Of a stretch of 63,143 nucleotides of DNA, positions 26,008 through 62,289 are shown piece by piece. This DNA is from Salisapilia sapeloensis CBS 127946. Taxonomy: Eukaryota > Protista > Oomycota. The DNA lies in contig JAADVB010000093.1 of assembly GCA_023334545.1 (NCBI GenBank), positions 1-63,143 on the forward strand, written 5' to 3'. A program made the translations under genes and the position numbers. The notes under the pieces were generated by a model, which saw nothing but the letters and a program-made list of their open reading frames with translations, made no database searches and was not told where the DNA came from. Every line of letters starts with the position of its first letter. Within the stretch, counting starts at the first letter, position 1.

Positions 26008-26074
26008 ATGACGTTCCAACTGCTTTCTACACTTTTGTTTGACATCTGGACAAGATCCTCTACGATTAACAAAG

Positions 26075-27202
26075 ATGAACGACAGTCAAGTGCCGTCGAG
26101 ACCACAGGAGCTCACGAACGGCACGCTCTACAGACTACTCCAGCCAAAGTATCCTCTGCAGGCCATCTCTCGAGTGGAATGGAAACCCATGGGTGCAGGA
26201 GTGCTCTCTGAAGTCGTCATTATCACCGCAGAAGGATCGACAAGAGAGAACGTCCCGTGGCGAGAAGAGTTCGTCGCCAAATTCCGACGACCAGAGTTCC
26301 CGTTTGAAGGCATGTTCAACGTCGAATCCACGCTTTACCTCTTGTTGGACCAGGATAGAGACTTGAACGACCGAATGCCCTTCGCATTGCCCCCAATTGT
26401 CTTCACGTCAGACAGACTCATCATTCTCGAGCGAGTCAAAGACGTCACGTCGACGCCAGCAGTCGAAGGATGCCCTGCTAGCAGCATACCACCAATCATC
26501 AAGAAATTGGCGCAAATGCATGCCCGATTCGCCGGCCTCGACTGCACCTCATTGGCGGCGAACGCTGGCATTGGAAGCGACTTGACTGGAGATACGAAAC
26601 GCGACAAATTCCCATCCACCTACAAGCCATTCCTTGATGACCTCGACCTGGAACAAGCAGATCGCTCTCGGATGAACAGTCTTTGTGAAGCTCTGAGCTC
26701 CAAGCCGGAGATCTTGAAACAGGTCCATGACGCTTTGCTCTCGAGTCCCTCCACGCTTATTCATGGCGATTTCCATATCGCTAATATGCTTTTCCCAAAT
26801 GAGGAAAACGACCGAACATGGCTTCTGGATTGGGCTGCCAGCGGACGTGGCAATCCCATGCGCGATGTCGCATTCTTTTTCATTGTGAGCACCACGACAG
26901 AGGACCGGCGTGCCCAGGAAAAGAACTATCTGAAGTTGTACATGTCAACAGTCAAGGACGAAGATGGATCGCTTGCATGCAGCGAGCAAGAATGGTGGTA
27001 CCAATACCGTCTTGCCGTCCTAAACCAGTTTGCTATTCTCGTCGTCTATGACCAGTTAAGCAAGCAACTGGCAAACAATGCGCCGACCGAAGAACTACGC
27101 ACTGCATTGCACCATCACTTTAAAGTCGTCAGCACCCGAGCGTGCCAATGCTTACTGGACCAGTTTCCGACCGTGGACTCTGTTCTGAGCTGGCTTAACT
27201 AG
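26075..27202 (+). CDS. Ecdysteroid-kinase-like / APH-choline kinase superfamily phosphotransferase
   Basis: Intronless 375-aa ORF with the Brenner motif HGDFHIANMLF, LLDW, G.G.P..DVAFF, and LAQMHARF. Confidence 0.85.
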   Translation: MNDSQVPSRPQELTNGTLYRLLQPKYPLQAISRVEWKPMGAGVLSEVVIITAEGSTRENVPWREEFVAKFRRPEFPFEGMFNVESTLYLLLDQDRDLNDRMPFALPPIVFTSDRLIILERVKDVTSTPAVEGCPASSIPPIIKKLAQMHARFAGLDCTSLAANAGIGSDLTGDTKRDKFPSTYKPFLDDLDLEQADRSRMNSLCEALSSKPEILKQVHDALLSSPSTLIHGDFHIANMLFPNEENDRTWLLDWAASGRGNPMRDVAFFFIVSTTTEDRRAQEKNYLKLYMSTVKDEDGSLACSEQEWWYQYRLAVLNQFAILVVYDQLSKQLANNAPTEELRTALHHHFKVVSTRACQCLLDQFPTVDSVLSWLN

Positions 27203-29379
27203 TGTCCATGAGAGCGGAATGCCTCGGGTGGCAATACATTGCACATGCGCTATCCTTTAAAACCCAATCAAAGACTTTGACCTATCCGACTATTTCGTTA
27301 TTCGCGTGCAGGATGAGTCGTTGAGAGGAAAGAATATGCTGTAACAAGCTATAGGTACATGGAACTTACCCTTCCGCTGCTCTGGAGGATAGACAAAGGA
27401 CTGACACAACATCCATTTGATGAATATCAAGCAAGGTAATGAACATGCCAAATGTAGTGTATCAAGGTACAACCATCGACACGAATGACGCATAGAAGTC
27501 ATAACGTCACAAACCGCATAATAATCAAACGACAGTATATGAATGCTCTCCAAGAGACATTGGCATCAATGTACATGAAATCGCGATAGCAACAGTTACA
27601 ATGCAGCTTGTAAACAGTACGATAAAGCTACATAAAGTTTTTTGCTTAAGCTCGCGTTATTCGTGATTCAGTTTTGTCTGTGAGTAAACACACTTCACCA
27701 AGAGCTGAGTACAAGCTTCTGAAATGAATTGCATCGTGAGCACTTTAAAAGCACTTTTATCTCTAATCGCACAAGGCAGAAATTTGATAAAATACACTAC
27801 GGATTGTTCACAAACCAGTCGGCGACTGACACGGAACGACATTAGATTAGTCGAGACATAATTGTGAACAAGAAATACAATAAGTATGTGCTTCTAGCGT
27901 AAAGCCGATACGTTGTGAAGGTAAAAGTGAGTTGGACTACTCTTAAGCATACTCAGCTTTGCGCAACGATTACGTCCAATATATCGTGTCGTGTGAAGGT
28001 TAAAATTCCAGGTCATCTCGTAGATGTGTCAAGGATACTGTCGAGTCATGATCCTGCGTCTAGGCAACTGATGCATTTATGTATTCCGGAATGGATGAAG
28101 ATTGTTTCAAACCCGAAGCATATTCATGTGGGCTTACGTGCTGGTGTTTCTTTTCAAGAGGATTATATTGCATACATAGGCATTCTTCCGCATAAGCGCA
28201 CGGTGTATTTTCGACGAAGAGTATAAAAGCTGATTTTGTCAAAATGCTTGACTGTCAAACATGACAATATAGATAAAGTTGCGTATGTCAGAGACTTCGA
28301 CTATAAACGAAGGATAGAACATATTAGTTTAAAAGACGGAAAGCATCGACACCGCTAGTAGGTGTAGTTCAGAACAAGTATTTCGGAGCAGATAATCAAA
28401 CGACAATGAGTGCCACGATCGAAACTTTAGCGTTTACAGTTATTGGCCTGGATCGAATGACCAGATGCGAGAGAAAAAGAAAACAAGCGACAAGAAGCCG
28501 AAAGCTTTACCAAGTTGCAGCGTACGTCTACTCCAAGGTAGACCTACAATGCGAAAAACTCCACAAAGACCTTGGCTTCATGCGTCTCTCTTCTCGTTCA
28601 AGATAGGCGCACACTGCATAATGTCTTTTAGCGACTTTCATCTATAGCCGCGCATACTATGCACGCAGGTGACAGCGCACTTACTTACACCAATTTCAAA
28701 AAGACATCTCCTCTGAAGTCGATATATGAAGTCGATCGGTGGACGTTGTGCCGAAAGGTCTTCGGTCAAGAACACACTACCTTTGAGTCCATGGCACCGT
28801 TGTCGTCCTCATCAGCCATTCGATTGAAGCATGGAGGCGCCGTTTTCAATCTTCAGGGCAGGCTTCATGTTCCGATCTATACACTTTCACAGTTCGCTTG
28901 TCCTACGACACTCGTCAATGGTATTGATACGAGACATTTGTTTCACACGAGCTGACATCAAAACACTAAAGTTAGACTTTCACTCGCCAAAAGAGGTAAC
29001 TATGTACACATACATAGTTCCCTCAACAAATGTAAACTTTCACATCAAGCTAGAAAATGGCTTTATAAACTAGACCGTGGGTCAACAACAGCAAAAGTAT
29101 TTGGCATAGAGAAGATATAACCGAGCGGAGCGACAATTTCCGCATAAAAGCTAAGTTAAGACACAGGTTAAACAGCAACCATACTCTTTATGACTCGCTC
29201 TTAGAAGGGACATAAATAGAGGATTTACAGTCTTACACATCAAAATATTTCGGTAAAGTGTCTTTGTTTCCATGATACGCATAAAGTTGTAAAACAAAGT
29301 ACGGCCAATACAACAACGAATCCCTGTTAGATTCTACAACGCAATCGTCGGTTCGAACTGCCTCCGACTCGAGTTAACG

Positions 29380-32200
29380 TTAAATAAATGCGTTCTCCTG
29401 AATGCTTAGTTTTTTAAATAAAACGTATACTTAGCATTAGGTATACAAATATGTCACAAATAAAGCTAAGTGTGATATAACAATAAATTGAGCAAATAGA
29501 AGACAATTCTTTTTCAGCAAAAAGATGGTATTGAATCGTTTATCGCTGTGTTAAAAAACTTAAAAATATGAAACAAATTCAACAATGCATTTCTACCTAT
29601 TATGACTTACTCCAAAAAAAAGTGACAAAAAAAATTTCAAGCTGAGAATAGTTTTAAGTACCTCTTCCCACGAAAAAAATGTAAACAAAGACGAACCACA
29701 TTTTTTCAAATAATTACAAATGCAAATCAATCGTTCAAATTTTAGTTTTTGTAAATAAATATTTATGGATATAAGTCTTATTATACTAACGACTTCGTAG
29801 AATTAAAGTGGTTTGTTTGATAGCGCATTTGCTAACCTTTTTAGTAGTATATACAGGTTATATAGCATCACAACTTAAACTTAAACTTAGGTTAAGTGAT
29901 AGCTTGCTAAGCAAACAAAAAATACCACAACATATCTTTATAAAATAGTTACTAGAATCAAAATAAAACTTAATTTTACACACAATTTACAAATTCAACC
30001 TCTGAAAAAAATAGTGCAAATTTCAAATATAACGTTTGCAGATGGTCAAATATGCCGTTAGTTTAACATAAATATAAACAGAAACAAATAAAAATTATAA
30101 TTAGTGATAGCAAAGACTTATTTATATTAACTAAAGCAATATCAAATAAAATTGTAAACATTTGTTTTCGTAACAATTAAATCAGTAGTACTTATTTGTT
30201 TTGCAAACCACTGTCGTCTGTATTAAAATAAATATGTACAATTTGGAATTTATAAATTGGTTTGTTTTAATAGAACAAAATCGCAGAGAAACGGGTTTTT
30301 TTGTAACAATTATCATAAAAAAACAATAGAGTATTAAACGTTATACAGCCACTGTAATATAAAACGTAAACTTCAATATAAAACATGTATCTCATAAATA
30401 AGATAAAAAATGTTAATTTAACACAGCAAAATTCAAAATTAATAGTTTTAATCCTTAAGCATATAACAACACAAAAATGCAATATACGCTATAAATACAC
30501 AGTTACGACAAACGGCAACATCAAGCAATAAATCACAATAAAATCTATCTAACACATAAAATATTTATTAATAAAACGACTTCATGAAGAGTGTTAAATA
30601 TGAAAGTTTTATCAAAATATTGAAGATAATCTATATATTTTATTATATCTTAAAAAGTGCATAGTTGAAAAATATAGACACAAATTATAAGATAATATAT
30701 AATAAAAATTAATATTCAATTCTTCCTGATTAATATATAATTGTGTTGTAAAATTATTGTTTTCATTTTTTAATATTTTGAAAAATTTAAAAATTGTGTA
30801 CTATGCTGTATGTGTTAAAATGCAGACTTTCATATTTCACAAACAATACAGACAGTTCAATTTCAACCTGTTGTATAAAATACTTTGTATTTCATCTTTG
30901 CATTTTGCACGTTTTATAGATGTATTTTAATTTACTTTTGCGTTTTTAAATATAAACAGTCATTTGTTAAGCAATATTGCTATCTATAAAGTCTTTTACA
31001 TATCATTTTGTTTTAAGGAAACTTAAAATGAGTAATAGCTTAATTGTATGCATTTCAACCATGTTGTATTGTACCATTTTTTTAGCGATGAAATTTCTAC
31101 TTTAACATGCAAATGGTATTAATGTACTGTATTAATATATAATTTAAAAGTCTTTTCAGAATATACTATATTTTGTAGAATTTACTATTTTAAAATAATA
31201 ATAAAAAGGTTACACTACCTGCAATTAAGATCACATGTTATTAGTTTGTATGTGTAGCAGTTTTTACAAAGTCAGCACACATTAAATAAAAATAGTTGTA
31301 TAATGTTGTGTATATGCTGTATCTATAAGATGGTCATACTTTTATTGTTATAAGTATAGAAGTCGATTGTGTTTTAATGACTGCTTATGCAAAATATAGG
31401 TCATGAATTATTTTACAAACTTTAAAGATTTTACTTTTATATTAAAAGACCATAGCCTACTATTCTTCTTATATTTTAATGTTTCTTATTCACAGATTTA
31501 AGAACACAAAACATTATAAAATTTTTAGCAAATGACTTTATAGATTTTAAAACATTTAAACATAAAAAAATATATTGTAGAAAAACTGTTAGCATACATT
31601 ATGCTTAGGAATTTAATGTAGCATATTTAAGGACTATTTTGGCTATGTTAGGTCTACTGTCATCTACATAAACGTAGAGTTTTACGATATACATCTCGTA
31701 TTATTTTTTTTTTGTTGAACACATTACAAAGCTTTGTGGTTGTAAATTACATAAATGGCGACTTCGAAACGTTTTACAAAAATATTTTATTTAAAAAAAA
31801 TAAGTCATTTTGTTCTTGAAAATTTGTTTACATACGCTTAAAATGTACGTGAGATAGTTTGCATTATCTTGATAAGTGCTGCTTTATATATGTTGAATTT
31901 TTTTATGTTATATAATACTTTAAGTTTCCTTGTAGCTACACAATGGTAACTGTGGTTTATTAAACTATTTTGTTAAATTGTAATAAATATTGACAGTACG
32001 ACATGACTAATTTTCAATGCGACATGACACTTTGCACTGTATTGGATATGTGTGTCATCTTACATATGCACACCGTATATCAACAACCTATAGTCAAGTG
32101 CATGTACAATTAAAATAAACACGTATTTATTCGATCTAGAATATTGCAAACTGTTTTTTAAAATTCTTTTACAAATTTGCAAATTGATGGTTTTATGATG
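29380..32200. other. AT-rich non-coding island (about 20-25% GC) within a gene-free block of about 8.6 kb
   Basis: Hand count gives 83 G+C in 420 nt at 30361-30780 (about 20%), versus GC-rich flanking genes. No credible ORF. GC declines gradually on both flanks. Confidence 0.9.
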
Positions 32201-34126
32201 CCATGAAGAATAAGTGTACATTTAAACTTATAGCAATAAGCTGGCAGCTATGTGTAGTATAAAAGTCTCTTTGATGACCACAAATCTGAGCAGCAGTATT
32301 AATGTTTGGCCGACCACGAATAGCAATTTCAAACCGCTTACAGCATATGTGGCCCTTCTTTGCAATACATCCTTCTCTTTGGCTAAGCATGCAAGATAGT
32401 TTTCATAATTTAAAATTAATCTTTGTATCCTTTAGATCTAAAATTAAAACTGCAGAACTACTCGACACATCAGTTACTGCAGTCGGGTATCACAATGAAG
32501 CTAAGGTAGTGTTTGTAGAAAATACAGTTTTGTGAAATGTGGTAGCTGGAAACCTCTATGCTCTCAAGACTGTATCGATACATTCAATTACTTGTTTATG
32601 CATGCATAGGAGTACAAAGTACTTCCGAGGTGTCTAGCTCAGACGAAAGAATTTTCAGCACTACGAAAGATGTCATGTACACATATGTGTAGAATCCTGG
32701 AGTGATCAACAGATGTGCTATACTTGCAGGTTTATATTCAAGAGAAAGTGTATTCAATCTGAGTACGACATTCTTTCATAGCGCTTTTGTCATACTAATT
32801 TGTCTACGTAGAACTTTATACGTTTCGGATATGCCTTTGTTATGAAGATTAAGGTCTTATAGAATCTCCGAATTCCTGAGAAGTTATGAAATACGCGAAT
32901 ATTACGCTCTGTTCAATTTCGCATCGCTTGCTCCGGTAATATACCATCTTAGTAGCAGCACAGGCTCTGAAGATTCTTAATGAACAATTATTGTACTTGC
33001 AGTCCTTGCTATATATATTATATTATTACCTCCAGCATTTACCGCATTATTTGCAGTGCGATATAGTTTGGGAAAACGATATTTACCATGGCTTATTTAT
33101 CTAGGATCCTAAAAAGGAAGTGCTATTGATCGCTGGGAGCTACTGAGGTGAACCAGACTGCAGCCAACGAACAGATGAAGGTTGAGCTTTGTACTTGACT
33201 GAACGAATCCAGGTATACACAATGGGCCGTATTGGTATAATAGCCGAAGTTAATCCGGAGGTAAGACCTGAATTTCAGCGAATTTAGTCCGTTTGCACTC
33301 TTACATATCAGTCTAGCATCTAGTCAACGAAGAAAGCGTTCTTGTTCCAAAGAATAAAGGTATTTTAAGATCGCATATCATCAGTAACGACTTCCTTAAG
33401 CGAAAGCAACCTAGATTTTTGCGTTTGAGATCTACTACAGCGGCCTAAATTTGCACTTGAGTCAGAGCTGGAATTGATCTTTCGTCCATGTATGTACTTG
33501 CTACAGAGCCTGCCGATGTTTGTAATTTTAACGGGTCAGGTTTGGTCTTAGCGATTGATGAACCTCATGCTACAAAATTAAATAGTGTACGTTGTCTATA
33601 TAATGGTAACAGCCAAGACAGTATGAAGACGGCTATAAGTCTCACAGATTTGCCCTCTGGACGATCCTAGAAGCGTTTATGAGTGATAGCGCTGCACCTA
33701 TACAACTTTTCCTAACCCATAACACTAAATACTTTGCGATTATTGCGGGTCTACCTGCGCCTTCACAGTACTATGGAGGTTTCAGCGTTGTCATAGTTCG
33801 ACTACGCGCGTCGACGCCAGAAGCTCAAATACGCTGAACAATGGGTCAATGTACGTTTATCGGTCAAATTACACATATATCGCAACTACATCGTGGCCTA
33901 TATCACCGGCTACGTGCTTGCACGACTAATGCCTCGGATCCATTTCACGTAGTATCTGACTCCCGTCAATTTGTCAGACACTACGCGTGCAGGCGGCCAC
34001 CGCTAAACGGCATAATAACATCTATTGGATGTATTTACAAATGGCTGATTCCCGAAACGTTGCCTCCTGGAGTAGGTTAGTAACAAGCTATGACAAACCT
34101 GCTAGGCGGTTGGCTGTTTCCTGCGA

Positions 34127-34867
34127 CTAGCGCATGTCAATAATGACGTTAGAAGAGGTGAATTCCCAATTATACCAAAACATCATCGAGCGCGAATACA
34201 GTCTGTAAGATCCGAATACGAGCTGATGAAAATCCTGAAGACTGTACTCTTCAAAACTGTCTTGGATAGGGAAGTGAGGTTCATTGGAGTCGAATGTCAT
34301 ACGAGATCTAACTCTGTTTATGACGACCGACTCGGGCAATTCTGCGTTCGCTAGGAGTAGCCGATGCTTCTTTGCCACTTGCGATTGGTAACCCAACATA
34401 ACATTTTAATGTAACTTTCCCGACAAACGAGGAGTACAAAGACAAGCGATCGGTGGTACCAATGGACACGCCGCCTTACAATGTTGATAAATCTCGCCTC
34501 ACGTGTTCCATCCTCTGTCGTAATTCACGTTTCCATTGCCATGCTCGCTATAGCATGAGTTGTGTGGGAATTGCAACATATAAATGTCTTGCTTGGAGCG
34601 AAGCAGGCCTTTGTAGATGTATTCTTCGAAATAATCTACTTTTTTCGTCGGTTTCTAGTAGGCCAGTTCAAGAGGCATGATACCGATCACAACTCGCATG
34701 TACTCGTTTTCATATTGCATCCTTTGCCTCGTATGGTCGCCAACTGCCTTCTCAACGAGCACAACCTTAGTTCTTTCTGGTCCATCTCTGTCTTCATCTT
34801 GGGTGCAATCAGGAGGAAACGCTCTTCGAGAAGACTTCAAGCCACGCCTGGGTCTCGAAATGTGCAC
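34127..34867 (-). pseudogene. Possible decayed coding or transposon-derived remnant
   Basis: Colinear protein-like ORF fragments (34867-34655 and 34399-34127) interrupted by stops. No family recognised. Confidence 0.2.
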
Positions 34868-35819
34868 ATTTGAAAAAGCGCGCGAACGACTCGGTGAGCT
34901 CTTCGCTATTATTTTGGAACAGACGTAGTACAGTGTTAGATGGAATAACTGAGCGACATCTGTGACTCACTGTACTCCGTCCCAATGAAATGACGAAGAG
35001 CTCAATAGCGCAAATAAATCGACTACAACTTCAACCTGAAGGGCTTCTGAAGATACGCACGACACGATTCCCGCCAAGGCATGACAGAGGTATGCGCGAT
35101 ACACGTGGATAGGTCTGGAGATATAAATAGCTACGTGAAAGTAGCACAAGCTATCAAAGACTCATGCTTAATGAAGTTCATGTACATATGTGATTCTACC
35201 CGCGTTCATTGAGCGGATAATCGGGTATTAGTCTAAGAATATGCAAAGAAACATAGATGAATTGTAACAGGAATTAATGCCTATCATCTTCGTCTAGATC
35301 GATCCATTGGATTAACCGTATACAAATCCTCTTGTGCCGTTTGTCCATACGATATTGTGTACCTACATTTGCGATCGCATCCCGTGGCATTGAGGCTTCA
35401 CTTGACCAAATCATTTTCATATCAACGGACGTAGCGATGCCATCGAAGTTTCTAGCGTCGTCGACCGACCCAAGTTTCCACCATCGAGCGCATTCTCTAT
35501 ACAGGCAGCTTGACTGTCGAGACAGTGTATCGTATCCCGCACCATCTATCCACTGACGAAGCCAAACCGCAACACGTACTCCTTTTGACGGTTGCCACCT
35601 GTGTCCGTGTGTATCATCTGCGTCTGCTCCAGTGCCTCCTTCCCGCCGCCTGTACCAGTCTCAAGTGGTCGCTGTACCATTACCCCGTAGCCATGATGGA
35701 CCTTTGCCCAATCCGAGTGCCAGAAAGTCACCTTTTCGACCAATCGCAGTCTGTACATCTCTACCATATTCAGCACGGCCGAAGTCAGTTGGTAAAAGGA
35801 CAAGAGCAGACTAGTCACG

Positions 35820-36509
35820 ATGGAAGACGTTAGCTTAAAGACCACGGAGCAGCCACAGGCACAGGAGGCCGGCAACGACAAGGCCCTCGACAACCTCATC
35901 TTTAGCGAAAACAAGGAAGAAGGGTCGACGGAGCACTCGGAGACGAAGCCCAAGAGCGGATCGCAGGACGGAGCTCCCGCCGCCACGTCCTCCGAGACGG
36001 ATTCGAACGAAGATGGAGAGGGAAAAGAGACCAAGCAGCGTTCGTCTTCTGGCCGATCTTCTCTCGTCAACGCCTTCCCCGTCGACAAGCTCAAGAACGG
36101 CGCGTCCACTGCCACCAAGGTAGCAGGCGGCGTCTTTAGCCTGGTCCGTGAAAAGTCTGGTGTCGCCTACGAGACAGCCAAGTCTTCCCAGGCGGGCTCC
36201 GCTGTCTCCAGCGGCTACACTCGTGCGACAACGGCTGGGTCGGAGCAGTTCGGAAAGCTCAAGGAGACCGATGCGTACAAGCGCAGCACGGCCGTCGCGT
36301 CTGGCGCTTATGACAAGGTGCTTTTCGTATTTGAACTAGAAAGAATGCAGTGTATTGATGTGTCGTAGGCTCGAATGGCTGCATCGTCTGGGTATGAGAT
36401 GGCCAAGACTGGCGCTTCGACTGGGTACGAGACCATCCGCTCACGCATGAACTCTGGGCAAGGGAGTGCGGAGACGGCAGCACCGTCGCAGGAGAGCAAG
36501 AAGGAATAA
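35820..36509 (+). CDS. Hydrophilic LEA-like/disordered protein; join(35820..36318,36369..36509)
   Basis: Low-complexity charged N-terminus, then repeated S/TG.YE.AK-type amphipathic units. One GT-AG intron in phase, TAA at 36509. Confidence 0.7.
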
Positions 36510-37760
36510 AGGTTTGGACATGAGCGTGGATAATCCGGCGTCCTAGGCGCATGCTTGGCTTGCTCTTTTCCCAGTTTTGTATGATGGTCGACGCGTCCTC
36601 TCGGCCGACTTTGCTTTTCACTTTCGTATCAGACAAGAGCTAGCTACAAAGAGAATAAAAAGAACGTAAAGCTTTGGACTTTGTGCATGAAGTCTTGCCG
36701 TTTGGTCGGCGGACTTGAACTCGACTTGAAGGTCCACTTGAACACCTGTATCAACATCAAGTTCGCTTCGACAACAACCGTTTGGTTTGGACTATCTTAA
36801 TACGTAGAAACAGTTCCTGGTTATTGTAATGAAGCTGCTAGTCTGAAGCATTGCTTCGTTGCTCTCTTGTACAGAGTCTGTTAGGTGGCTAGTGGAGTAG
36901 TGATAGTCTGTATTGCTACAGGACTACTTGACTATATTTTTGACGGGTGACACTTGGAAGCGACGTGTTCATGCTTCCGTATCTCTTGAACACGTCTACC
37001 ACTGTATCGTCTACCGACCTAGTCATCAAGTGAAATGTGATTCTTCTAGCTCTGGATTTAGACGACCGAAAGCTTTTCAGACCATACTCGATCTTGTCTT
37101 CGACTTTGGTGAGTACATCCAAGCATGACTTCAGTCGTCTTGTAGACTTCGTTCGAGTCTAGTAGTCGGATCTGTAGCGAAGACTCCCACTCTTGGAATA
37201 CTTGTACGTGTGGAATTGTAATTTCATGTTCACGGCGATAGGCATCGAGGTAAGGACCGAGAATACCGGACCAAGATTACTTCAGAAAGCAAAGCCCTCG
37301 ACACGATATGACTGTGCACCTATCTGCGTTAGCTGCCATCGTATCCAGTGGAGCCCACCGACCAAGTCTAGAAGAGGTAAACGGTAAAACGACAGTTTAT
37401 GGAGTAGCTGCGTGCTGCCCTATAACAGTCGTATCCTGCCGGAATCTCCACGTCGCTTCCTGCCAATCCTGCCATGTATTCGACTCACTCCAAACGATTG
37501 AAGGCACTCATATCCTTCCTCTGTCACTTGGTTCTTACCAACCAAGTGCATTAGATTCAATAGCTGTACTCTCTACTCCCGCAGCTAGATCTAAAGCGTA
37601 TATGCATGACCAGCACCTCTTGAGCACTCGGTAGCTTATATCTAAAACACTGCTACGGACGTTTACCATCCTGATGGCAACTATGACAGACGAAAGCAAG
37701 AGCAAGAGGTAGAAACGTATTCGCGTTGTTGCTTAGAAGAGATATCTCGTCCATCGTCCA

Positions 37761-38543
37761 TCATCCGCTTCCGACCGCACTCATGAGCTTAAAGTACTCT
37801 GTCGCGTTTTCTGTCACATGGTGCTTCATGAGCGTCATGTCCGTCGGCGCAGCGCTCGTGACGTGGACAACTCGCGCAACGTGTTTCTCCAAGGCCAGCA
37901 CCGTCTCCTCTTCCACTATAGCCACCATGTCGTTAGTTACCTTCTGACCGTCCTATCGATCATACATACTACCTTCCACGTGGACTTGCGGCTCGATCTG
38001 ACGCACGAATGCGATCCGTCCGATGCTCGTGGTGCAAAAGAGGATGCGCTGCGGTGCGAGTCCCGTCGGAGACGAAGGCTTCAGGAGCGGATCGCTCGTG
38101 ACAAACGACCGGAGTTTTTGCATATGCTCCTGCGTCTGCTTCTCGTCCATGCCGGAGACAGTTGCTAGGAGGTAGACGTCCGCGACGCGGACTAGATCCG
38201 CGATCATCTGCGGCGTGTCAGCACTCGCCCACTCGCATTCGCCGTCGGCTTTAACGAGCGTCTCGAGGCAGATCGTAATGGCCCTCGTGCCCATCCGCGA
38301 CGGCAGCGATCGATGCAGTGTAAGCTGGCTGTCGCTCAGTCCGTTCGTATTAATGAGCTTGGCGGGCAGCGTCGCGTGTTCATTCGTCTGGAAGCGTCCT
38401 GGCATCAGCCGATTGTCATTCTGGGCCGGATGCCGGTCGCGTATGGCCGTGGGTTGCTGGGAGACGAAGAGGTAGGTCGTAGCGGCTAGGAGGACGAGTA
38501 CAAGGAGCACGAGGCCAACAGAGCTGTCGTCCTGCACGTCCAT
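37761..38543 (-). CDS. PEX22: Peroxin PEX22-like protein, 2 exons
   Basis: N-terminal TM anchor. ADVYLLA, ILFCTTSIGRIAFVRQIEPQVHVE and the spliced EETVLALEKHV match the plant-type PEX22 pattern. The start could be 38603. Confidence 0.7.
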
Positions 38544-49348: not shown

Positions 49349-52300
49349 CTACTCAAGCTTAATTTTGGCCTTGGGGATGTGAATGACGTTGGCGCCAGTG
49401 ACTTTTGTGAGCGTCTCGGGGGATCTCAAGACTCGTATGAGCGTTTCAAAGATGCGCACTTCGTCTTTGAGATGACCGATGTAGTTTCCGTCGCGCGCGA
49501 TGTAGACGCCTTCAATGAGCTCTAGGACGTCCTCCGGGTCCGGCAGTTCAGCGTACTGGATCTCGAAGATCTTGCCTCGGAAGAAGCCTTTGACGGCACT
49601 TCCGATCGTCACGACGACGAAGAAGTAGACTGCTGCGAGACCGTACTGGTCAATATCGAGCGAGTTGAGGCCCTGGACGATATTGTCCGATACGGCGATG
49701 ATGCAGAAGGGCATCTGTTTGGAGCAATAGTCCTCTTTACTCGACGTCGCTTCGTTGAACGAGTCGATGGTCCACCAGCTCTGCGAGTCGGCCATGTGTC
49801 GCTGCAACTTGATGCTCCTCATGGTCGTGGATCGATTCAGCACGCCTTCCGTCGCTGTCAGCTGCATGATCGGAGGGTACAGATCCGGCACAAGCAGCGG
49901 CTCCGTGCTTTCGATCGAACTTCCGTTCTTGTTCGTCATGTCGAGCATGCGTACGAGGAGCTCTCTCTGCTCTGGATCAAGCTGTCCGTAGTACTTTTGC
50001 TCGACCGTCTCGTCATTCTCAGGTCCAGGTCGAACGAACGTGAGCTTCATGCTCCACTGGAGCTTGGTCGTGTTCGCCTGGATCTGCGACACGAGGAGGT
50101 CGATGCGCGGTGGAGACGTCGTCCAGATGTACCTCGAGAACGGATTGAATCGAATGCGCTGGACACTCGCGCCTTCCGTGTTCTTGTCGATGTCAAAGTC
50201 TGGGCTATTAAAGTCTGCGTTCGAGTACAATTCGCTAAAGGTGCCGAATGAGTCTTCGAGGCCAAAGACGACGGTCGAGTGCGTGACTTTATTCTCGGCC
50301 GTGGACGGATTCGCAGAGCTGAAGATCGCGAGTGGGCCGATGAGACAGAGCAAGAGGAAGAAGAGCATGACACCAGCCGTCATGAGTTTGGTTCGCATCG
50401 GCTGCCGGCGTTTGCCTTGCAGTACCTCTGCTTCTTGTACTCTCTTACGCATTTCTAACTTTACTTTAAAGAGGTGGGCACCAGCGTCTTCTAGAAGGAC
50501 CCAATGGGCCCACTCGAGCGACGTCTTGGTGCAGATGTAGTCTAGCAGAGCTCGCATCTCGAAGAGGAACGGGATGAGCATCATGAGAGGGAACGTGACT
50601 TCCGACAGCTTGGTGTAGATGTTGTGCTTGGTGTAGTTGTACCTGGATCCGCGGAAGACCTGGTAGCCGTATCGGATCTGAAGCGCACCGAGCCATAGGT
50701 AGCAGCATTGGACGAGGTAGAAGATGACGAGACCGGCGCGGTGCTGAAAGTACTTGTTCGTATGCGATGGGATGAGGTACCACACGGTCAGGTGGAGGAC
50801 GAACGTGTAGACGTATTGGAGGACGAGTTTCGCACGTAGAGAGCCTCGTACGAAGGCTACTCGGTCCCAGATGACGGTGATCATTTGGATAAAGACCGTC
50901 AGGACGAGGTAGCCAGAGAGCATGGAGCTACTGGTGAGTCGACCACTGGCGTTCGCTACGTCGCTCTCGTCGCTCGGTTCGCCAAAGTCTTCGAAGAAGA
51001 TGAGCGAGTACACGATGAGGAAGAGCTGGACAGCCAGTGATGACGTGTAAAAGTCTCTCCCAGGCTTCTCGCCCTGGACTGCGACGTAGATGTCTTTATC
51101 CCATTGCGGCGGCGGGTCCGCCATGACGCCTTGGAAGTAGTGGTAGACCTTTGGGATCTTTTGCTCGAGCCACTTTTGCTTCGTATGCCCATTCACGTTG
51201 GTCGTCGAGTCCTCGATCTCGACTTGCTCCGTCTCTTCGACCTGCTCCTTTTCTTTCTTCTCGTCCTCTGGGATCGAGTCGGACGAGAGACGCTGAGGAG
51301 CTTGGTGCTCCGCTCCCTCCTCTTCCTTGTCTTCTTCCTCTGCCGCTTTCAGTCGTTCCTCCTCCTCCTCTTCCTCTTGCAGCTCTCCTAAGAGCTCCGA
51401 GGCCAAGTCGGTACTCATGTCCGTACTCGGCTTGCTCATGTGGTTGCTGATCGCCGTCGTCGTCGTCTGTCTCGTAAGCATGTGGACATCTCCTAGTCGA
51501 GCATCCGTGGATGATCCATTCTCCATCTCGGAGCTCTCGTGCTCCGAGCTTTGTCTCGCAGTCGGTTGCGGAGGTAGCTGCGTCATGTTATCAGCCGGAC
51601 GCATGCTACTGACGCGATAGACTTCATCGATCGAATCTCGAGACGAGCTCTCCGAGTTCTTGATCACATCCGAGTGGAGCACCATGTCTTCATCTCCTTC
51701 CTCCTCCTTGGAGATCCAGAAGCCTCGTATCATGAGCTCTCGCCTGTGCCAAAGGATCGCGAGGACGATGTAAAAGTCCCATTGAAGACCAATGTAGATG
51801 CTGCTGATGCTACTGATGGCGCTTTCATCGAACTTGTACAGGCCGAGCAAGACCATCGGCTGGATGGCTTGCGGCGACCGAGTGATCGTATACGAGTTCA
51901 TGGACGTGCAATGGGGCTCAACGCTCGGGACGTAGTACCCGTCGTTATTCAGTTTATCGCAAAAGACCGACAGCTGATACGCGTACCGGAGGCCGATGAC
52001 GAGGAACGAGTAGAGGAGGAGGGTGACCCATGCCTTGGCGCTCGGCCGCGGGTTTTCCAGGATCAAGTAACAGAACGCAAAGAGGACGTAGATCATGTTC
52101 AAAAGGTCTGCCTGGCTCATGAACGAGATGACCATGACGAGGCAGCACACGGCGGCGCTGTGGCTGCGGAAGACGTTGGTCGTGATGCGCAGGAGCTCGG
52201 CCATGGATGGCTCGAACTGGTCTTCCGGCTCGTATCGTATCGTGTCGAGTCGAAAGCCAGCGTCCTGGAGCTCGTAGACGAAGCGGTATACCGGGATGCG

Positions 52301-55300
52301 CCAGCTCAAGAGCGACTTGCTCGCTTCTTTATCGAACTCGAGGTCTTCCAGGTCACCCAGAGTGCTCTCGTCGCCCGTTACGCTACTCCATTCGCTGTGG
52401 CTGTCGTCTGTGTCGTCGTCCTTGCCGTAGATGTCACGCGCCTCTTGGTCCAAGGGACTCGGGAGGTTCTTCTCCGCCAGTGTCGACAGGATGCTGGGCT
52501 GCAGCGCGTCCTTGGGGGCAGCGAACGCGAGCGCCTGGAGAAACTTGGCAAAGTCCTGCACCTGTTCTACCTGGAATTCATACTTGAAGTCGCACTTGCG
52601 TTCTGTGCTGCGGACAACGATCTGATATGTGTATAGGAGAGGCGAGACGTCGTCGAACTGGACCTTGTTCTCGCTCAGCTGAAGCTTGAGGACATGTCGC
52701 CACGGGAACGACGTCTTGATCTTCTTCCGGCGCTTGCGACTTCGATGCTTGAGCGCTTTCTCTTCATCCTGGTAGAACGCCAGGCCGTTGTTGTCGACCA
52801 CGACATATCGATGGAGGTACTTTGGTCGCATCCAGGACACGACAAAGTCGAGCTTCGGGGGAGGAACGTGTTCTCGTCGGTACTTCATCCACCCGGCGGT
52901 GCACGTGCCATTCAGGTTGAGCGCGAGCGTCGACACGGGGTCACAAGCGGTGCTAAAAGGTCCTTCGCCCATGCGAGAGACGGCCGCCACTTTGAACTGG
53001 TAGCTCGTGCCTGGTCGCAGGCCTTCGATTGTGACTTGCGTCGTGGATCCCTTGACTTCCATGAGGTCTCCAAAGTCTCCTAGTAAGGTTAAGGATGGGT
53101 ACTGCTGTCGTACGATGCGGTAGAAGCGGATCTTATGGAGCGACTCGGACGGAGGCTCCCAGGACAAGGTGACCGAGTTCTGTGTCGTGTCGACGACTGT
53201 CGGCCGAGGCGGTGCCATGGGTGGAAGGTTGTGGTGGAGTCCCATGGCGATGTCCATGAGCTCATGGACTTTGTGCACGAGTTTCGACACGATGACACGC
53301 AGGCGTTGGATCGCCGCGCTCTTCTCGCGTTTCATCTGGAGCCACTGGGCCGTCCGCTCTTTGAAGAAGGCGCGAGTGATCTCGTAGCTCCGGACATGGG
53401 CTCGAAGGAGCTCGCGTTCATAGTACTGACAGACCTCAAAGTATGACGAGCTCTGGAGCATCTCGCACTGGACGCTGATAAAGGCAAAGACGACGATCAG
53501 CCCCACTGGTGTATAGTCGAGCGGGACGCCCAGGAGGTTGGCGATGGACGCACAGCCGCCGTAGGCGTCAGCAGCCGAGCGGTTGCCGAGCTTGCAGTCG
53601 AGGAGCTGGTCTCGAAAGTACGGCGCTTGGAGGACAATGATAAGGAAGAGATGGAACCAGTTGAAGCGTCGGAGGTAGCGGATCCAGACGTTCTGCGGGT
53701 CGCGCGTGTCGTCGATGCGATAGAGCATGACGCCGGACGCCCAGACGTACGCGAGCGACAGGATACCGCCTTGATTGGCGCCGACGACGAAGCACGTGAA
53801 GAGCACGACTGGCAGCCACGTCGACAGGACGATGAACTCGAGGTAATACCACATGTACTTGCGCGTGCGCATGATGTACTGGGATTCTGGCTGAACCTCG
53901 GGCGACTGGGCAGTGAGGCCGCTGGCGCCAGAGGCATGACGCGCGAGAGGCGAGGCTTCCATGACCGAGACTTGGTTCAACGGCGTCGGGCCGGAGGACG
54001 GTTTGAGGAATCGATGGGACATGGGAAGGAGGTAGACTGCCATGAGCGCGATGAAGTCCGCGAGCATCGCCCACTTTTGCTGATGCGCGAGCATGTACCA
54101 CTGCTGGTAGTCTAGAGGGACGATGCGCCAAGGGAAGGTGCTTTGTTTGTCCCATCCCAAGTCTGGCGGGAGGAAGAGGAGGAGATAATACTCAATGAGA
54201 ATGACAAGAGAGAGGACGATGGCGAGAAGCAGCCATCGCTTGATGACGTTCACTGCTTTGGCATACATGAGGCTATAGACTATCAGCATATACGGAATGG
54301 ATACAATGTCTTCATGCAAAAAGCTAGAGACGACAAAGAGCAGGATGACGGCGTTCACGGACACTTTGCTCGCATAGTCGACGCAAAAGTCACGGAGACA
54401 CGAGAGGAAGTCTTTGTCGCCTGCGCCGGAAGAGTACCCAGCGTTCAGGAGCATGGCCGTGGACGATGGACTGCGTGGCGAGTCGCCACGGACGCCTGTG
54501 ACATGGGACATGTTGGAGGGCGCAGTGCTCGGCGGATGGACGTCATCATCGCTGTCCATGATCGCGACGTTCGACGCTGTCTGGTGCTTAAGGTCTCTGT
54601 TGCCCATGCGCTGGGCAAAGTCATGCTCAAAGCGTGAGATAGCGAGCTCGACTCGGTCTTTCGATCGATTCGGAGTAATGCCGGTGCTGCCGTCAAAGTA
54701 CTGTGCCGCGCGATGGAGGATGCACATGCCGACGATGGCGAGTTCTCCGCTCAAGAGACCCCAGAGCGAGGCCGTCGCTTGGTTCGTGTCATACCTTTCC
54801 GAGAGACGCAAGAGACCGATCCAGTCGGTCGTGTCTTGGATGTGCGTTGGCGCAACGTTGGTCTCCTGTTCCGGGTCAAAGGTGCTCATCTGGATGAAGA
54901 ACTTGAGGACGGCGGCAGTAGCTGCGATCCAGAAGAGTGGTCGCCAGAGACAGCGCCAGTTGCCGCTAAAGAAGCGGCCGAGGATGATGGTGAGGACGTA
55001 GAGAGCACCGATGGCATCGATCTTACGAATCGCGACTACCATGGAGATGATCGTTAGTGCAGGCGTGCTGATGGCGACGAGGATGCGACGTATCGAGTCG
55101 AGAGCGAAGAGGAAGCGATCTGCCGCGACACTTCTTCCTGCAGCGAATAAGGGATAGACCTTGACGTCTTTGGACATGGAAGACATTTGCCAGAAGGTGA
55201 GTGCCATGAGAATGGCGGTCGGGAGGAGGTAGAAGAAGACATTGGAAAGGTTTTTATAAGTCGAGTGGTTTTCGAGGCCAATAGCTTCGGCCGAGACAAA

Positions 55301-58017: not shown

Positions 58018-59224
58018 GTTCGTGTTAGCCACCGGGAGTAGTTTCGGGACTGGCGCCTGTCAATGAAAAAATCGTTTCGTAGCTGATTTGTCCGTTTGAC
58101 TGGCACCGAGTATAGAGTCGTACGGCGTGGTACGAGGTTTCCACTGGATTCGACTCGGATCGATATAACGGTTGTCGTCGAGAGCTATAGTTGCTTACTT
58201 GGAATGGGATTGGATGTGGATGACAAGTGCAGCTGAAACGACTTGGCGGATGTACAGAGATTGGACTTGTGCTTCTTCTTCTGGTAGAGACAATGGACAT
58301 GTTGGCATGGCAAGTGGTCAGCGCGATACGGAGGCGATTGATATAAACATGATATATTGCATTTGGTTCATGATGGATGGGAGGGTTTATCTAGTATCTG
58401 TTGTGTCTTACATGAGAGCAAGTGTGAGTGCTTTCGAAAGGTCTGAGGATCGTGGTAGCAATGGGACATGTTGACGATCATATTGACAGTTGGAGATGAG
58501 GTTGAAATGGCTTTGGTAGGCGAGGTCTGTGGCGCTTTGGACGGACGGAATAGTGCGAGGTAGTATGCTAGAAAGCATGGTGTGTAGAAGAGTCGGTCAT
58601 GAAGGGTGGAAGTAAGTCAGTCTGGTGTATTCGAAGTGATGTTCTGGGCAATCCTTTCTCATGGAAACTCGGTGACACGTACGAACAAGAAGAATTTTGG
58701 ATCGAAATAAAGGCGGTCAACTGCCTACATACAAGAGATCGAGTAGTACCTCGACTACAAACTTCGTTCATGGGAATAACTTTCGCTCGCTAAGCCCATC
58801 GTGCATCGTATCAACCATACGAGATCATGTTCTTCTCGACAACTACAATCCCGTTACAAAGTTGAACAAGAAATGATGGCCATCATACCAAGCACATCCG
58901 GCTGCAAGTCCTTCCAATCCCACTACACGGAAACTCTAGCTAAAACACCCATGTGCCGACTACCAAGCGTTTCCTCACATATACCTCTAGAAATCGCTCT
59001 ACCACCATGTCTCCAACCAAAATTTCAAATCCAACTCCATCTAAGCACCATCTCTATCTCGGTCGCAGCCTGCTCTTCCCGCCCTCGTCGTGTCTATCTT
59101 GCAGAGTCGTTTGAAACGTCTTGTTATCTAGTGTTGTTAAGGTGTTTCTAACATCTTCGATTTGCCACCAGCCATTTTCCAAGTCCTCGAACTCGTTTGG
59201 TAAAGAACCCTTTTGCTTATTGAG

Positions 59225-59794
59225 ATGACGTACAGCCAGGAGCCGGAGGATGCCCAGCGTGCGGCCAAGGCCCGCGCGACCCAGGTCCGTGTCCACTTCA
59301 AGCACTGCCGTGAGGTCATGCACGCTATCAAGGGCCTGCCGCTCGTGAAAGCCAAGACGTACCTGCAGGACGTGCTCGACTACAAGCAGGCCGTTCCGTT
59401 CACCAAGTTCACGGGTGGATGTGGCCGTCACGCCCAGGGCAAGCTCGCCAAGGCCGCCGGTGACAAGGTCAAGTGGCCCCACAAGGCGACGCAGGTGATC
59501 GTGGACTTGCTCAAGAACGCCGAGTCCAACGCCGAAGTCAAGGGCCTCGACACGGACCTCCTGTACATTTCCCACGCCCAGGCCAACCTCGCCATCAAGC
59601 AGCGTCGCCGTACGTACCGTGCCCACGGTCGCATCGGACCGTACCTCGCGCACCCGGCCCACATCGAGCTCATCCTGACGGAGAAGCGCACGAACGTGGC
59701 CAAGGCCGAGGAGCCGGCCAAGCAGCCCAAGCTCACGCGCAAGCGTCAGGCTCAGCTGCGCCTCAAGTCTGGCGGAGGCGTGCCTGCCAACTAG
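59225..59794 (+). CDS. RPL17: 60S ribosomal protein L17 (uL22)
   Basis: [47 protein letters not shown] and [11 protein letters not shown]. Strong codon bias. Confidence 0.97.
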
Positions 59795-59859
59795 GAAGAC
59801 AAGAAAGGATAAGGCATAATTCAGTTTGCTTTGCCAAGGGTTCCATTATTTCCATGTTT

Positions 59860-62216: not shown

Positions 62217-62289
62217 CGCCCACCGTGGGGCTCGAACCCACGACCACAAGATTAAGAGTCTTGCGCTCTACCGACTGAGCTAGACGGGC
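62217..62289 (-). tRNA. tRNA-Lys (anticodon CTT)
   Basis: Reverse complement GCCCGTCTAGCTCAGTCGGTAGAGCGCAAGACTCTTAATCTTGTGGTCGTGGGTTCGAGCCCCACGGTGGGCG, 73 nt, forms a cloverleaf with A/B boxes. An oligo-T Pol III terminator follows (62211-62205). Confidence 0.97.

What the first reader, a model, noticed from the sequence alone, without database searches (positions are those of the whole stretch)
27203..35819. Candidate small AT-rich regional centromere in a GC-rich, gene-packed oomycete-like genome
Seen: most gene gaps elsewhere in the window are under 250 bp and none exceeds about 2.7 kb, yet this 8.6 kb has no credible gene. GC falls gradually on both sides to a core of about 2.8 kb (29.4-32.2 kb) near 20% GC (83/420 at 30361-30780). 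There is no tandem satellite and no recognisable intact retroelement. Known: short low-GC centromeres occur in diatoms, Plasmodium and Cyanidioschyzon, whereas Phytophthora sojae centromeres are large and transposon-rich. Inference: this could be a compact AT-defined centromere of a type unlike Phytophthora's. The symmetric gradient would fit loss of GC-biased gene conversion in a non-recombining locus.
Basis: partly seen in the sequence, partly recalled or inferred. Interest (0 to 1): 0.75.

Follow-up and report, generated by a model that had tools for sequence, protein, structure and literature searches.

The report
Short AT-rich centromere-like island, oomycete
A unique, gene-free 8-kb gap with a 3.3-kb very AT-rich core is one of a set of near-identically built islands in a compact water-mould genome, and it is most likely a small centromere that also starts DNA copying, unlike the huge transposon-filled centromeres known in other oomycetes; no kinetochore data exist to prove it.

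Summary
Window 27200-35276 has no open frame of 120 aa or more. The core 29151-32450 is 26% GC (minimum 19.8%), against 54% for the rest of the window.

The region has no satellite, RNA gene or protein-domain relic. It is single copy apart from one 0.85-kb dispersed repeat in the right shoulder.

I examined 32 of the 46 AT-run loci in the 22.4-Mb assembly. They split cleanly into 22 ordinary AT patches and a discrete class of islands:
- seven complete islands of 3.1-3.5 kb;
- three truncated pieces.

The islands share no sequence. They share one GC profile and one mirror-image strand skew: A/C-rich on the left, T/G-rich on the right. This holds in 7 of 7 islands against 1 of 18 control patches. 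The sign is that of a fixed replication origin.

This island sits exactly at the junction of two gene blocks conserved in other oomycetes.

The best reading is a small, composition-defined centromere with a built-in origin, as in diatoms and some Candida-clade yeasts (confidence about 0.5).

What I could not test:
- CENP-A binding;
- one island per chromosome. The assembly has no telomeres, so transposon-type centromeres could be unassembled.

This scan had already flagged the same island class on other pieces of this genome.

The parts
26039..27202 (+). Left flanking gene: EcKL/CHK-type kinase, the last gene of ancestral block A (WD40, AP-4 epsilon adaptin, EcKL)
   Evidence: Pfam EcKL E 1e-14. 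46-51% identical to oomycete orthologues. In Pythium oligandrum and a Logan relative it is followed by TLC, L22 and MutS genes.
27203..29150 (.). Left shoulder: single-copy non-coding DNA, GC 0.38-0.47, weakly A-rich on the + strand
   Evidence: No open frame of 120 aa or more, no Pfam match, no other copy in the genome.
29151..32450 (.). AT-rich core island: 3300 bp, 26.2% GC, non-repetitive and unique in the assembly
   Evidence: 52 of 59 100-bp windows are at or below 32% GC.
30600..30900 (.). Centre of the island: GC minimum (19%) and the point where the + strand switches from A-rich (with a weak, non-significant C excess) to T-rich
   Evidence: The cumulative AT skew peaks at island position 1557. 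AT skew is +0.135 left and -0.072 right (p 4e-7). GC skew is -0.075 left and +0.016 right: the same sign as the class, but not significant for this island alone.
32451..35819 (.). Right shoulder: non-coding DNA with GC rising from 0.36 to 0.47
34309..35282 (.). Copy of a non-coding dispersed repeat of about 0.85 kb inside the right shoulder, probably a non-autonomous transposon relic
   Evidence: At least 40 copies in the genome at 70-84% identity, many at contig ends. Copies also in L015 and L007. No ORF over 94 aa in the L015 copy.
35820..36368 (+). Right flanking gene: conserved oomycete protein of about 200 aa with no Pfam match, the first gene of ancestral block B (g200, Pex22, TRAPP, Asp/Arg hydroxylase-methyltransferase, MIOS, LETM1, Piezo-like)
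   Evidence: tblastn with the P. oligandrum neighbour L035 18176-18920, E 3e-20. Block order is conserved in L035 and L036.

Best explanation
The 3.3-kb AT-rich core is most likely the DNA of a small regional centromere, with its non-coding shoulders as the immediate pericentromere. It would be composition-defined rather than sequence-defined, and one of a family of such islands, roughly one per chromosome.

Inferred mechanism. A CENP-A chromatin domain of about 20 nucleosomes sits on the AT-rich core. The same spot fires as a constitutive, probably early, replication origin. Over evolutionary time the lagging-strand template on each side has lost cytosines, mildly preferring TpC. That leaves the + strand A/C-rich to the left of the centre and T/G-rich to the right, and drives GC down towards a minimum at the centre.

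Shown: the anatomy, the discrete class, the skew and its sign, the uniqueness, and the synteny junction.

Inferred: kinetochore binding, origin firing and the mutational cause.
For: 1. Discrete class. All 64 runs of at least 24 A/T in the genome map to 46 loci. In the 32 loci examined, the lowest 2-kb GC is either 0.216-0.253 or at least 0.381, with nothing between.
2. Stereotyped build. Seven complete islands measure 3100-3500 bp and share the same GC profile: core 0.19-0.33, shoulders 0.36-0.47.
3. No shared sequence or motif. blastn finds nothing between islands apart from one 96% allele-like pair. The only shared k-mers are A/T tracts.
4. Mirror skew. AT skew left exceeds right, and GC skew left is below right, in 7 of 7 islands. 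Pooled chi-square p is 5e-26 for A/T and 1e-7 for G/C. Only 1 of 18 non-island AT patches shows that sign pair (Fisher p 1.7e-5). The sign puts G and T on the leading strand of a central origin, as at Candida albicans, C. lusitaniae and Yarrowia centromeres. There such a pattern occurs once per chromosome, and ordinary origins lack it (PMC2924309).
5. Count. Nine distinct islands among the examined loci extrapolate to about 12-22 in 22.4 Mb. That is far too few for general origins and in the range of oomycete chromosome numbers (12-18; PMC11139960).
6. It meets the diatom low-GC centromere rule (10.1101/096016).
7. It lies exactly at the junction of two ancestral gene blocks that are 1.24 Mb apart in P. 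oligandrum. Oomycete and Malassezia karyotype breaks cluster at centromeres (PMC11139960; PMC7025860).
8. The genome shows only three Copia reverse-transcriptase hits and no CoLT-type cluster.
Against: - No CENP-A, Hi-C, replication or transcription data exist for this genome.
- One island per chromosome cannot be tested. The assembly has 1365 contigs and no (TTTAGGG)3. The contigs carrying islands total only about 0.5 Mb.
- The assembly lacks telomeres and mitochondrial DNA, so repeat-rich CoLT-type centromeres could simply be unassembled or collapsed. One intact Copia element exists on C881.
- All oomycete centromeres studied so far are 100-350 kb, CoLT-rich and of average GC (PMC7082073).
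- The census is incomplete: 14 AT-run loci were not examined, and islands without a 24-base A/T run would be missed.
- C519 carries a second AT-rich piece 2.5 kb from its island.
- In this island alone the GC skew is not significant (p 0.20).
- Divergent non-coding transcription would give the same skew sign.
Confidence: 0.5

Rival explanations
1. The island is a fixed replication origin or initiation zone, or a silent divergent non-coding transcription unit, with no kinetochore function. The AT richness and mirror skew come from strand-biased mutation around that point. The real centromeres lie elsewhere, perhaps in unassembled repeats.
For: The skew sign is the origin sign. A/T tracts are enriched. 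The assembly lacks telomeres and probably repeat arrays.
Against: About 12-22 islands in 22.4 Mb is one per 1-2 Mb, far too sparse for the origins of a compact genome. In yeasts, ordinary origins do not accumulate such skew and centromeric ones do (PMC2924309). The uniform 3.1-3.5 kb size and the gene-free shoulders are not needed for an origin.
Confidence: 0.17
2. The island is an old insertion captured at a rearrangement breakpoint: a transposon, a piece of mitochondrial DNA (oomycete mtDNA is also about 22% GC, from my own knowledge) or viral DNA. It has since decayed by AT-biased or TpC-directed hypermutation until unrecognisable.
For: It lies at a synteny breakpoint. TpC is depleted: 0.75 against 1.28 in genic DNA. 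A transposon relic lies in the right shoulder.
Against: - The islands share no residual similarity, though copies mutated by a RIP-like process stay alignable.
- About 27 kb of island DNA holds no tRNA or rRNA.
- There is no significant Pfam match and no phage match.
- CpG is not depleted and CpA is not converted to TpA.
- Independent insertions would not share a size of 3.1-3.5 kb, a symmetric profile and a centred skew reversal.
Confidence: 0.1
3. The island is another kind of AT-rich chromatin element that recurs about once per megabase, such as a scaffold or nuclear-envelope attachment site, a domain boundary or a meiotic pairing site.
For: It belongs to a discrete, stereotyped, gene-free class. 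Nothing here ties it directly to the kinetochore.
Against: As far as I know, no such element has a fixed 3-kb size, unique sequence and a centred origin-type skew. The centromere is the only element known to occur once per chromosome (argument of PMC2997560).
Confidence: 0.1
4. The island is an assembly artefact or contaminant DNA joined to oomycete genes.
For: Extreme AT content is prone to coverage drop-outs. Three island pieces sit at contig ends or form whole small contigs. No reads were available.
Against: Seven islands are embedded in contigs of 27-111 kb with ordinary oomycete DNA on both sides. There are no Ns. Composition ramps smoothly rather than jumping. A 96% identical second copy of one island exists.
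Confidence: 0.03

Closest known systems
Diatom centromeres (Phaeodactylum tricornutum; Diner et al., preprint 10.1101/096016)
   Same: Also a stramenopile. CENP-A peaks of 2-5 kb on unique, non-repetitive low-GC DNA, with no shared motif. They are defined by composition: at least ten 100-bp windows at or below 32% GC within 3 kb, and a 500-bp stretch under 33% GC. Runs of consecutive A/T matter for function. This island passes both numeric rules.
   Different: This island is much deeper (26% over 3.3 kb, against an average of about 39% over diatom peaks). The class is far more uniform in size. It carries a centred strand-skew reversal that the parts of the diatom preprint I read do not mention. 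CENP-A binding and episome maintenance are untested here.
Centromeres with a constitutive origin in Candida albicans, C. lusitaniae and Yarrowia lipolytica (Koren et al. 2010, PMC2924309), and GC-poor troughs at yeast centromeres (Lynch et al. 2010, PMC2997560)
   Same: Small, unique, gene-free regional centromeres. GC and AT skews reverse with opposite signs at the centre, with G and T on the leading strand. The pattern occurs once per chromosome. In C. lusitaniae and Y. lipolytica there is a local GC drop at the switch point.
   Different: The yeast GC3 troughs span 100-300 kb of genes. Here neighbouring genes keep GC3 of 0.59-0.79, so the trough is confined to 8 kb of non-coding DNA. The lineage is unrelated (fungi against stramenopiles).
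Oomycete CoLT-type centromeres (Phytophthora sojae, Globisporangium, Peronospora; PMC7082073, PMC11139960)
   Same: Same group of organisms. Poor in genes, and associated with karyotype breakpoints.
   Different: Those are 100-350 kb, rich in Copia-like transposons, heterochromatic and of average GC (52-58%). This is 3.3 kb (8 kb with shoulders), unique and about 24% GC. The assembly has only three Copia hits.
Malassezia (3-5 kb with an AT-rich core; PMC7025860) and Plasmodium falciparum centromeres (short, simple, AT-rich; cited in PMC7082073)
   Same: Short AT-rich cores of uniform size on unique DNA. In Malassezia, centromeres coincide with synteny breaks.
   Different: From my own knowledge, Plasmodium cores are about 97% AT in an already AT-rich genome and contain short repeats. 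Here the contrast with a 54% GC genome is the striking part.

Membership tests
Diatom-type low-GC regional centromere | At least ten 100-bp windows at or below 32% GC within a 3-kb region | tested here: met
   52 of 59 windows in 29001-32000. The best 3-kb window that does not overlap the finding has 4.
Diatom-type low-GC regional centromere | A 500-bp sub-region under 33% GC | tested here: met
   19.8% at 30301-30800.
Diatom-type low-GC regional centromere | Unique, non-repetitive sequence with no shared motif | tested here: met
   No repeats. The core is single copy in the genome. No similarity between islands. The only shared k-mers are A/T tracts.
Diatom-type low-GC regional centromere | CENP-A occupancy and ability to maintain an episome | not testable with these tools
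   No chromatin or functional data.
Any monocentric centromere | Exactly one per chromosome | tested here: inconclusive
   No examined contig holds two full islands, but the contigs are at most 159 kb. No telomere repeats are assembled, so chromosomes cannot be counted. The extrapolated 12-22 islands fit known oomycete karyotypes.
Centromere with a constitutive origin (Candida/Yarrowia type) | GC and AT skews reverse with opposite signs at one central point | tested here: met
   7 of 7 islands against 1 of 18 controls. In this island AT has p 4e-7; GC has the same sign but is not significant.
Centromere with a constitutive origin (Candida/Yarrowia type) | Earliest replication and ORC binding at the switch point | not testable with these tools
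   No replication data.
Oomycete CoLT-type centromere | A region of 100-350 kb filled with Copia-like transposon clusters | tested here: not met
   The gene-free span is 8.1 kb. No reverse-transcriptase or integrase domains. Only three RVT_2 hits in the genome, none on this contig.
Oomycete CoLT-type centromere | GC content like the genome average | tested here: not met
   24-26% against 54%.
Point centromere (CDE-type) | A short conserved sequence motif shared by all centromeres | tested here: not met
   No specific 9-11-mer is shared beyond homopolymer A/T tracts.
RIP-type AT isochore (fungal) | Derived from repeated DNA, with CpA-to-TpA conversion | tested here: not met
   Unique sequence. 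CpA 1.22, TpA 0.91, CpG 0.99.
Nuclear insert of mitochondrial DNA | Recognisable mitochondrial genes, tRNAs or rRNAs | tested here: not met
   No tRNA or Rfam match in any island locus and no significant Pfam match. The organism's own mtDNA is not in the assembly, so a direct DNA comparison was impossible.

The most novel reading that the evidence does not exclude
A compact oomycete lineage uses 3.3-kb, sequence-unique, composition-defined centromeres that double as constitutive replication origins. They would be closer to diatom and Candida-clade centromeres than to the transposon-filled centromeres of Phytophthora. If so, either low-GC centromeres are ancestral in stramenopiles and the CoLT type is derived, or centromere type was replaced outright within oomycetes. 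The strand-specific loss of cytosine around the centre would then be a readable footprint of that dual function.
Probability: 0.45. Interest if true: 0.8.

Novelty: new variant of a known kind. Interest (0 to 1): 0.6.

Why it matters
If these islands are centromeres, oomycetes hold two radically different centromere designs. That makes the group a test case for how centromere type changes during evolution.

It would also link oomycetes to the composition-defined centromeres of diatoms. Low-GC DNA already serves as a plasmid-maintenance element in diatoms and in a labyrinthulomycete (10.1101/096016; PMC12227449).

A 3-kb centromere with a built-in origin is small enough to test directly on a plasmid. 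That could give oomycete genetics a stable episome.

The stereotyped size and the centred strand skew also offer a sequence-only way to find such centromeres in other draft genomes.

Tried and rejected
Fourteen of the 46 AT-run loci stay unexamined: C688, C706, C746, C863, C878, C952, C978, C1002, C1147, C1159, C1168, C1178, C1189, C1213.
- Chromosome count from telomeres: (TTTAGGG)6, (TTTAGGG)3 and the scan's candidate repeat (TTATAGG)4 all gave zero matches.
- Mitochondrial origin: COX1 has no match in the assembly, so the organism's own mtDNA could not be compared. I relied on the absence of tRNA, rRNA and Pfam matches instead.
- Decayed genes in the shoulders: open frames from the relatives' neighbouring genes gave only chance-level tblastn hits between 27.2 and 35.7 kb. 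Pfam scans of 30 open frames gave no significant match.
- A 127-aa open frame inside the C590 island is a low-complexity F/L/I/Y/K/N translation of the T-rich strand, with no Pfam match. I treat it as chance.
- Locating the continuation of block B in this genome: an exon of the AKAP7-like neighbour from P. oligandrum found nothing.
- Phage DNA: no match.
- Rejected causes: fungal RIP and 5-methylcytosine decay, on dinucleotide grounds; a point centromere, on motif grounds.
- Not attempted: CenH3 in this genome, because its presence would not discriminate between the readings; positional homology with mapped Phytophthora centromeres, because no coordinates were usable here.


Full report
**Observation**

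The window is the whole contig C1289 (63,143 bp) of a 22.4-Mb assembly in 1365 contigs. GC is 0.48-0.65 in nearly every 1-kb bin. Between 27 and 35 kb it falls to 0.43, 0.43, 0.31, 0.22, 0.24, 0.36, 0.43 and 0.45.

At finer scale GC declines from 0.47 at 28.7 kb to a minimum of 0.19 at 30.6-30.9 kb, then climbs back to 0.45 by 33.7 kb. 29.4-32.2 kb is 24.3% GC and the rest of the window 54.2%.

No stop-to-stop open frame of 120 aa or more lies between 27199 and 35277, a span of 8078 bp. Such frames tile the rest of the contig, and the next largest frame-free gaps are 1.7 and 1.25 kb.

The region holds:
- no tandem array and no repeat over 29 nt;
- no tRNA or Rfam family;
- no significant Pfam match in 30 open frames from core and shoulders; the best two reached E 0.0037 and 0.07, both far below their cut-offs;
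- no phage-like DNA;
- no Ns.

- The right shoulder holds one copy of a non-coding dispersed repeat of about 0.85 kb (34309-35167, plus a fragment to 35282). The genome has at least 40 copies at 70-84% identity. Everything else in 27203-35819 is single copy.
- The shoulders (GC 0.38-0.47) are close to ordinary non-coding DNA of this contig (0.41-0.49). The structure is therefore a 3.3-kb core inside an unusually long non-coding gap, not one smooth gradient.

**The organism**

Flanking proteins are 46-51% identical to Pythium, Globisporangium, Phytophthora and downy-mildew orthologues, and 39-42% identical to Saprolegniales. This is an oomycete on a deep branch nearer the Peronosporales/Pythiales side. 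No closer relative turned up in the protein collection searched.

**A discrete class of islands**

I listed every run of at least 24 consecutive A/T in the genome: 64 runs at 46 loci on 45 contigs.

The loci are bimodal. The lowest GC over any 2 kb is 0.216-0.253 in ten loci and at least 0.381 in the other 22, with nothing between.

Seven islands are complete. Using 500-bp windows under 33% GC, their sizes are:

| Contig | Size (bp) |
|---|---|
| C1289 (this window) | 3300 |
| C269 | 3100 |
| C519 | 3300 |
| C590 | 3450 |
| C678 | 3100 |
| C1089 | 3500 |
| C1122 | 3150 |

Three more are cut by contig ends or are whole small contigs (C631, C1228, C159).

Aligned on their centres, the seven have almost the same GC profile: 0.19-0.25 in the middle 2 kb, 0.28-0.33 at the edges, and shoulders of 0.36-0.47 for at least 1.5-2 kb on each side.

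They share no sequence. blastn with 11-mers finds only one chance 21-mer. The exception is C159, a 96% identical copy of part of the C631 island and probably the other haplotype. No specific 9-11-mer is shared beyond homopolymer A/T tracts, which exceed first-order expectation.

Islands carry about one to three 24-base runs each. A truncated-Poisson estimate therefore suggests that roughly a third of islands have no such run. Allowing for that and for the 14 unexamined loci gives about 12-22 islands in 22.4 Mb. This is an extrapolation, not a count.

**Mirror-image strand skew**

In all seven complete islands the + strand is more A-rich on the left half than on the right, and more C-rich on the left than on the right.

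| Half (pooled) | AT skew | GC skew |
|---|---|---|
| Left | +0.083 | -0.077 |
| Right | -0.080 | +0.059 |

Chi-square p is 5e-26 for A/T and 1e-7 for G/C. Such a pattern is unchanged by reverse complementing, so arbitrary contig orientation cannot produce it.

As a control I centred the same 3.3-kb frame on the AT-richest point of 18 non-island loci. Only one shows this sign pair, against 7 of 7 islands (Fisher p 1.7e-5).

In this window the switch lies at about 30.7 kb, where GC is lowest. AT skew is +0.135 left and -0.072 right (p 4e-7). The GC skew has the class sign but is not significant alone (p 0.20).

The sign puts G and T in excess on the strand that would be the leading strand of forks leaving the centre. 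This is the classic origin signature. Koren et al. found it at the centromeres of Candida albicans, C. dubliniensis, C. lusitaniae, Lodderomyces and Yarrowia. There it occurs once per chromosome, with a local GC drop in the last-named species, and ordinary origins lack it (PMC2924309). Divergent transcription from the centre would give the same sign and cannot be excluded.

**Mutational texture**

- CpG is not depleted (0.99).
- CpA is enriched (1.22) and TpA is not (0.91).
- TpC is depleted: 0.75, against 1.02 in the shoulders and 1.28 in genic DNA.
- GpC is enriched (1.57).

This excludes 5-methylcytosine decay and Neurospora-type RIP. It is compatible with a mild C-to-T bias at TpC.

The depletion is slightly stronger on the strand that would be the lagging-strand template on each side: 0.68 against 0.76 on the left, 0.73 against 0.83 on the right. 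This is only suggestive.

**Synteny**

To the left lie a WD40 gene, the AP-4 epsilon adaptin and the EcKL kinase. In Pythium oligandrum and a Logan relative, EcKL is followed directly by an unnamed gene, a TLC-domain gene, ribosomal protein L22 and MutS.

To the right the order is g200, Pex22, TRAPP, Asp/Arg hydroxylase-methyltransferase, MIOS, an unnamed gene, LETM1 and a Piezo-like giant. This matches, gene for gene, a block in P. oligandrum and another Logan relative. That also confirms the ORF starting at 35820 is a real gene (E 3e-20).

In P. oligandrum the two blocks lie 1.24 Mb apart on one contig. In this genome L22, the TLC-domain gene and the unnamed gene reappear, rearranged, at 59.2-61.0 kb. 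The island therefore sits exactly at a junction between two ancestral blocks.

Centromere-associated breaks are the rule in oomycete karyotype evolution (PMC11139960) and in Malassezia (PMC7025860). A breakpoint is also where foreign DNA can be captured, so this evidence cuts both ways.

**Interpretation**

The best-supported reading is a small regional centromere defined by composition, with a constitutive origin at its centre. The combination behind this reading is:
- a discrete, stereotyped class of islands;
- unique sequence;
- gene-free surroundings;
- about one island per 1-2 Mb;
- a centred origin-type skew;
- a position at a synteny junction.

It passes the numeric rules that describe diatom centromeres (52 of 59 100-bp windows at or below 32% GC; a 500-bp stretch at 19.8%; 10.1101/096016). 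It fails every defining feature of the only oomycete centromere type described (100-350 kb, CoLT-rich, average GC; PMC7082073). The assembly has only three Copia reverse-transcriptase hits.

I put this reading at about 0.5 for four reasons:
- Nothing ties the islands to the kinetochore.
- One island per chromosome is untestable in this assembly.
- The assembly lacks telomeres and mtDNA, so repeat-rich centromeres could be missing from it.
- The census is incomplete.

Genes 1-5 kb away have GC3 of 0.59-0.79, no lower than distant genes. That is unlike the 100-300-kb GC3 troughs at yeast centromeres (PMC2997560). The strand asymmetry instead needs a replication- or transcription-linked process.

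**Rivals**

- A non-centromeric origin or non-coding transcription unit (0.17) explains the skew. It does not explain the low number or the uniform size.
- A decayed insertion at a breakpoint (0.10) is hard to square with the shared size, the symmetric profile and the centred skew, or with the lack of any tRNA, rRNA or significant domain match in about 27 kb of island DNA.
- Another recurrent chromatin element (0.10) has no known model.
- An artefact (0.03) is unlikely, because seven islands are embedded in long contigs with smooth composition ramps.

**Earlier notes**

This scan had already flagged the same class on other pieces of this genome, as about 15-21 look-alike islands with mirror skew and pyrimidine-C depletion. 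I used those notes as leads and re-derived the class, the skew, the uniqueness and the dinucleotide bias independently here.

What this window adds:
- a non-island control for the skew;
- the two-block synteny junction;
- the transposon relic in the shoulder;
- the GC3 argument against the gene-conversion model.

**Novelty**

I found no paper in the held library that describes short AT-rich centromeres in oomycetes. If confirmed, this is a new variant of a known kind of centromere, in a lineage where the opposite design is the textbook case.

Noticed in passing
window 34309-35282; also L015 5626-6373 and L007 5193-5712: A non-coding dispersed repeat of about 0.85 kb with at least 40 copies in the genome at 70-84% identity, many at contig ends. 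It has no long ORF and is unclassified; it may be a non-autonomous transposon or a solo LTR.
   Followed up: partly
L003 (C159, whole 1459-bp contig) against L018 691-2142 (C631): A second copy of part of one island, at 96% identity: 48 mismatches (30 transitions, 38 of the 48 exchanging G/C for A/T) and 11 gap columns. It is probably the other haplotype. If so, island alleles differ by about 3-4%.
   Followed up: partly
L022 (C1228, whole 2581-bp contig): A 23% GC contig whose first and last 153 bp are inverted copies of each other (98.7% identical). It is either a hairpin-like assembly artefact or a real palindromic end of an island.
   Followed up: no
L012 1-900 (C519:310-1210): A second AT-rich piece (25% GC, with a sharp edge) lies only 2.5 kb from the C519 island and runs towards the contig start. 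It contains an 85-bp palindrome-bearing repeat shared at 93% with C100. It does not look like half of a standard island.
   Followed up: partly
G000:C952:119-5173: Eight runs of at least 24 A/T within 5 kb, the densest cluster in the genome. It could be a longer or different kind of AT-rich region.
   Followed up: no
whole assembly G000: No (TTTAGGG)3 telomere repeat, no COX1 match and only three Copia reverse-transcriptase hits, one of them intact on C881 with a 1726-aa frame. Telomeres, mtDNA and perhaps repeat arrays are missing from the assembly.
   Followed up: partly
window 36400-37900: In Pythium oligandrum a mitochondrial-carrier gene lies between Pex22 and the g200 gene. Here the equivalent 1.5 kb has only short open frames and GC of 0.44-0.52, so the gene seems lost or moved.
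   Followed up: no
window 59200-61000: Ribosomal protein L22 (+), the TLC-domain gene (-) and the unnamed gene that follows EcKL in relatives (-) lie 32 kb to the right of EcKL, in rearranged order. Block B plus the island therefore appears inserted into block A by more than one inversion.
   Followed up: partly
window 49352-57862 (-): One uninterrupted open frame of 2837 codons, orthologous to a Piezo-like gene with fibronectin-3 and PH domains in P. oligandrum.
   Followed up: no
window 61400-63143: The contig end is non-coding and fairly AT-rich (GC 0.38-0.43). It carries a tRNA-Lys(CTT) gene at 62217-62289 (-).
   Followed up: no
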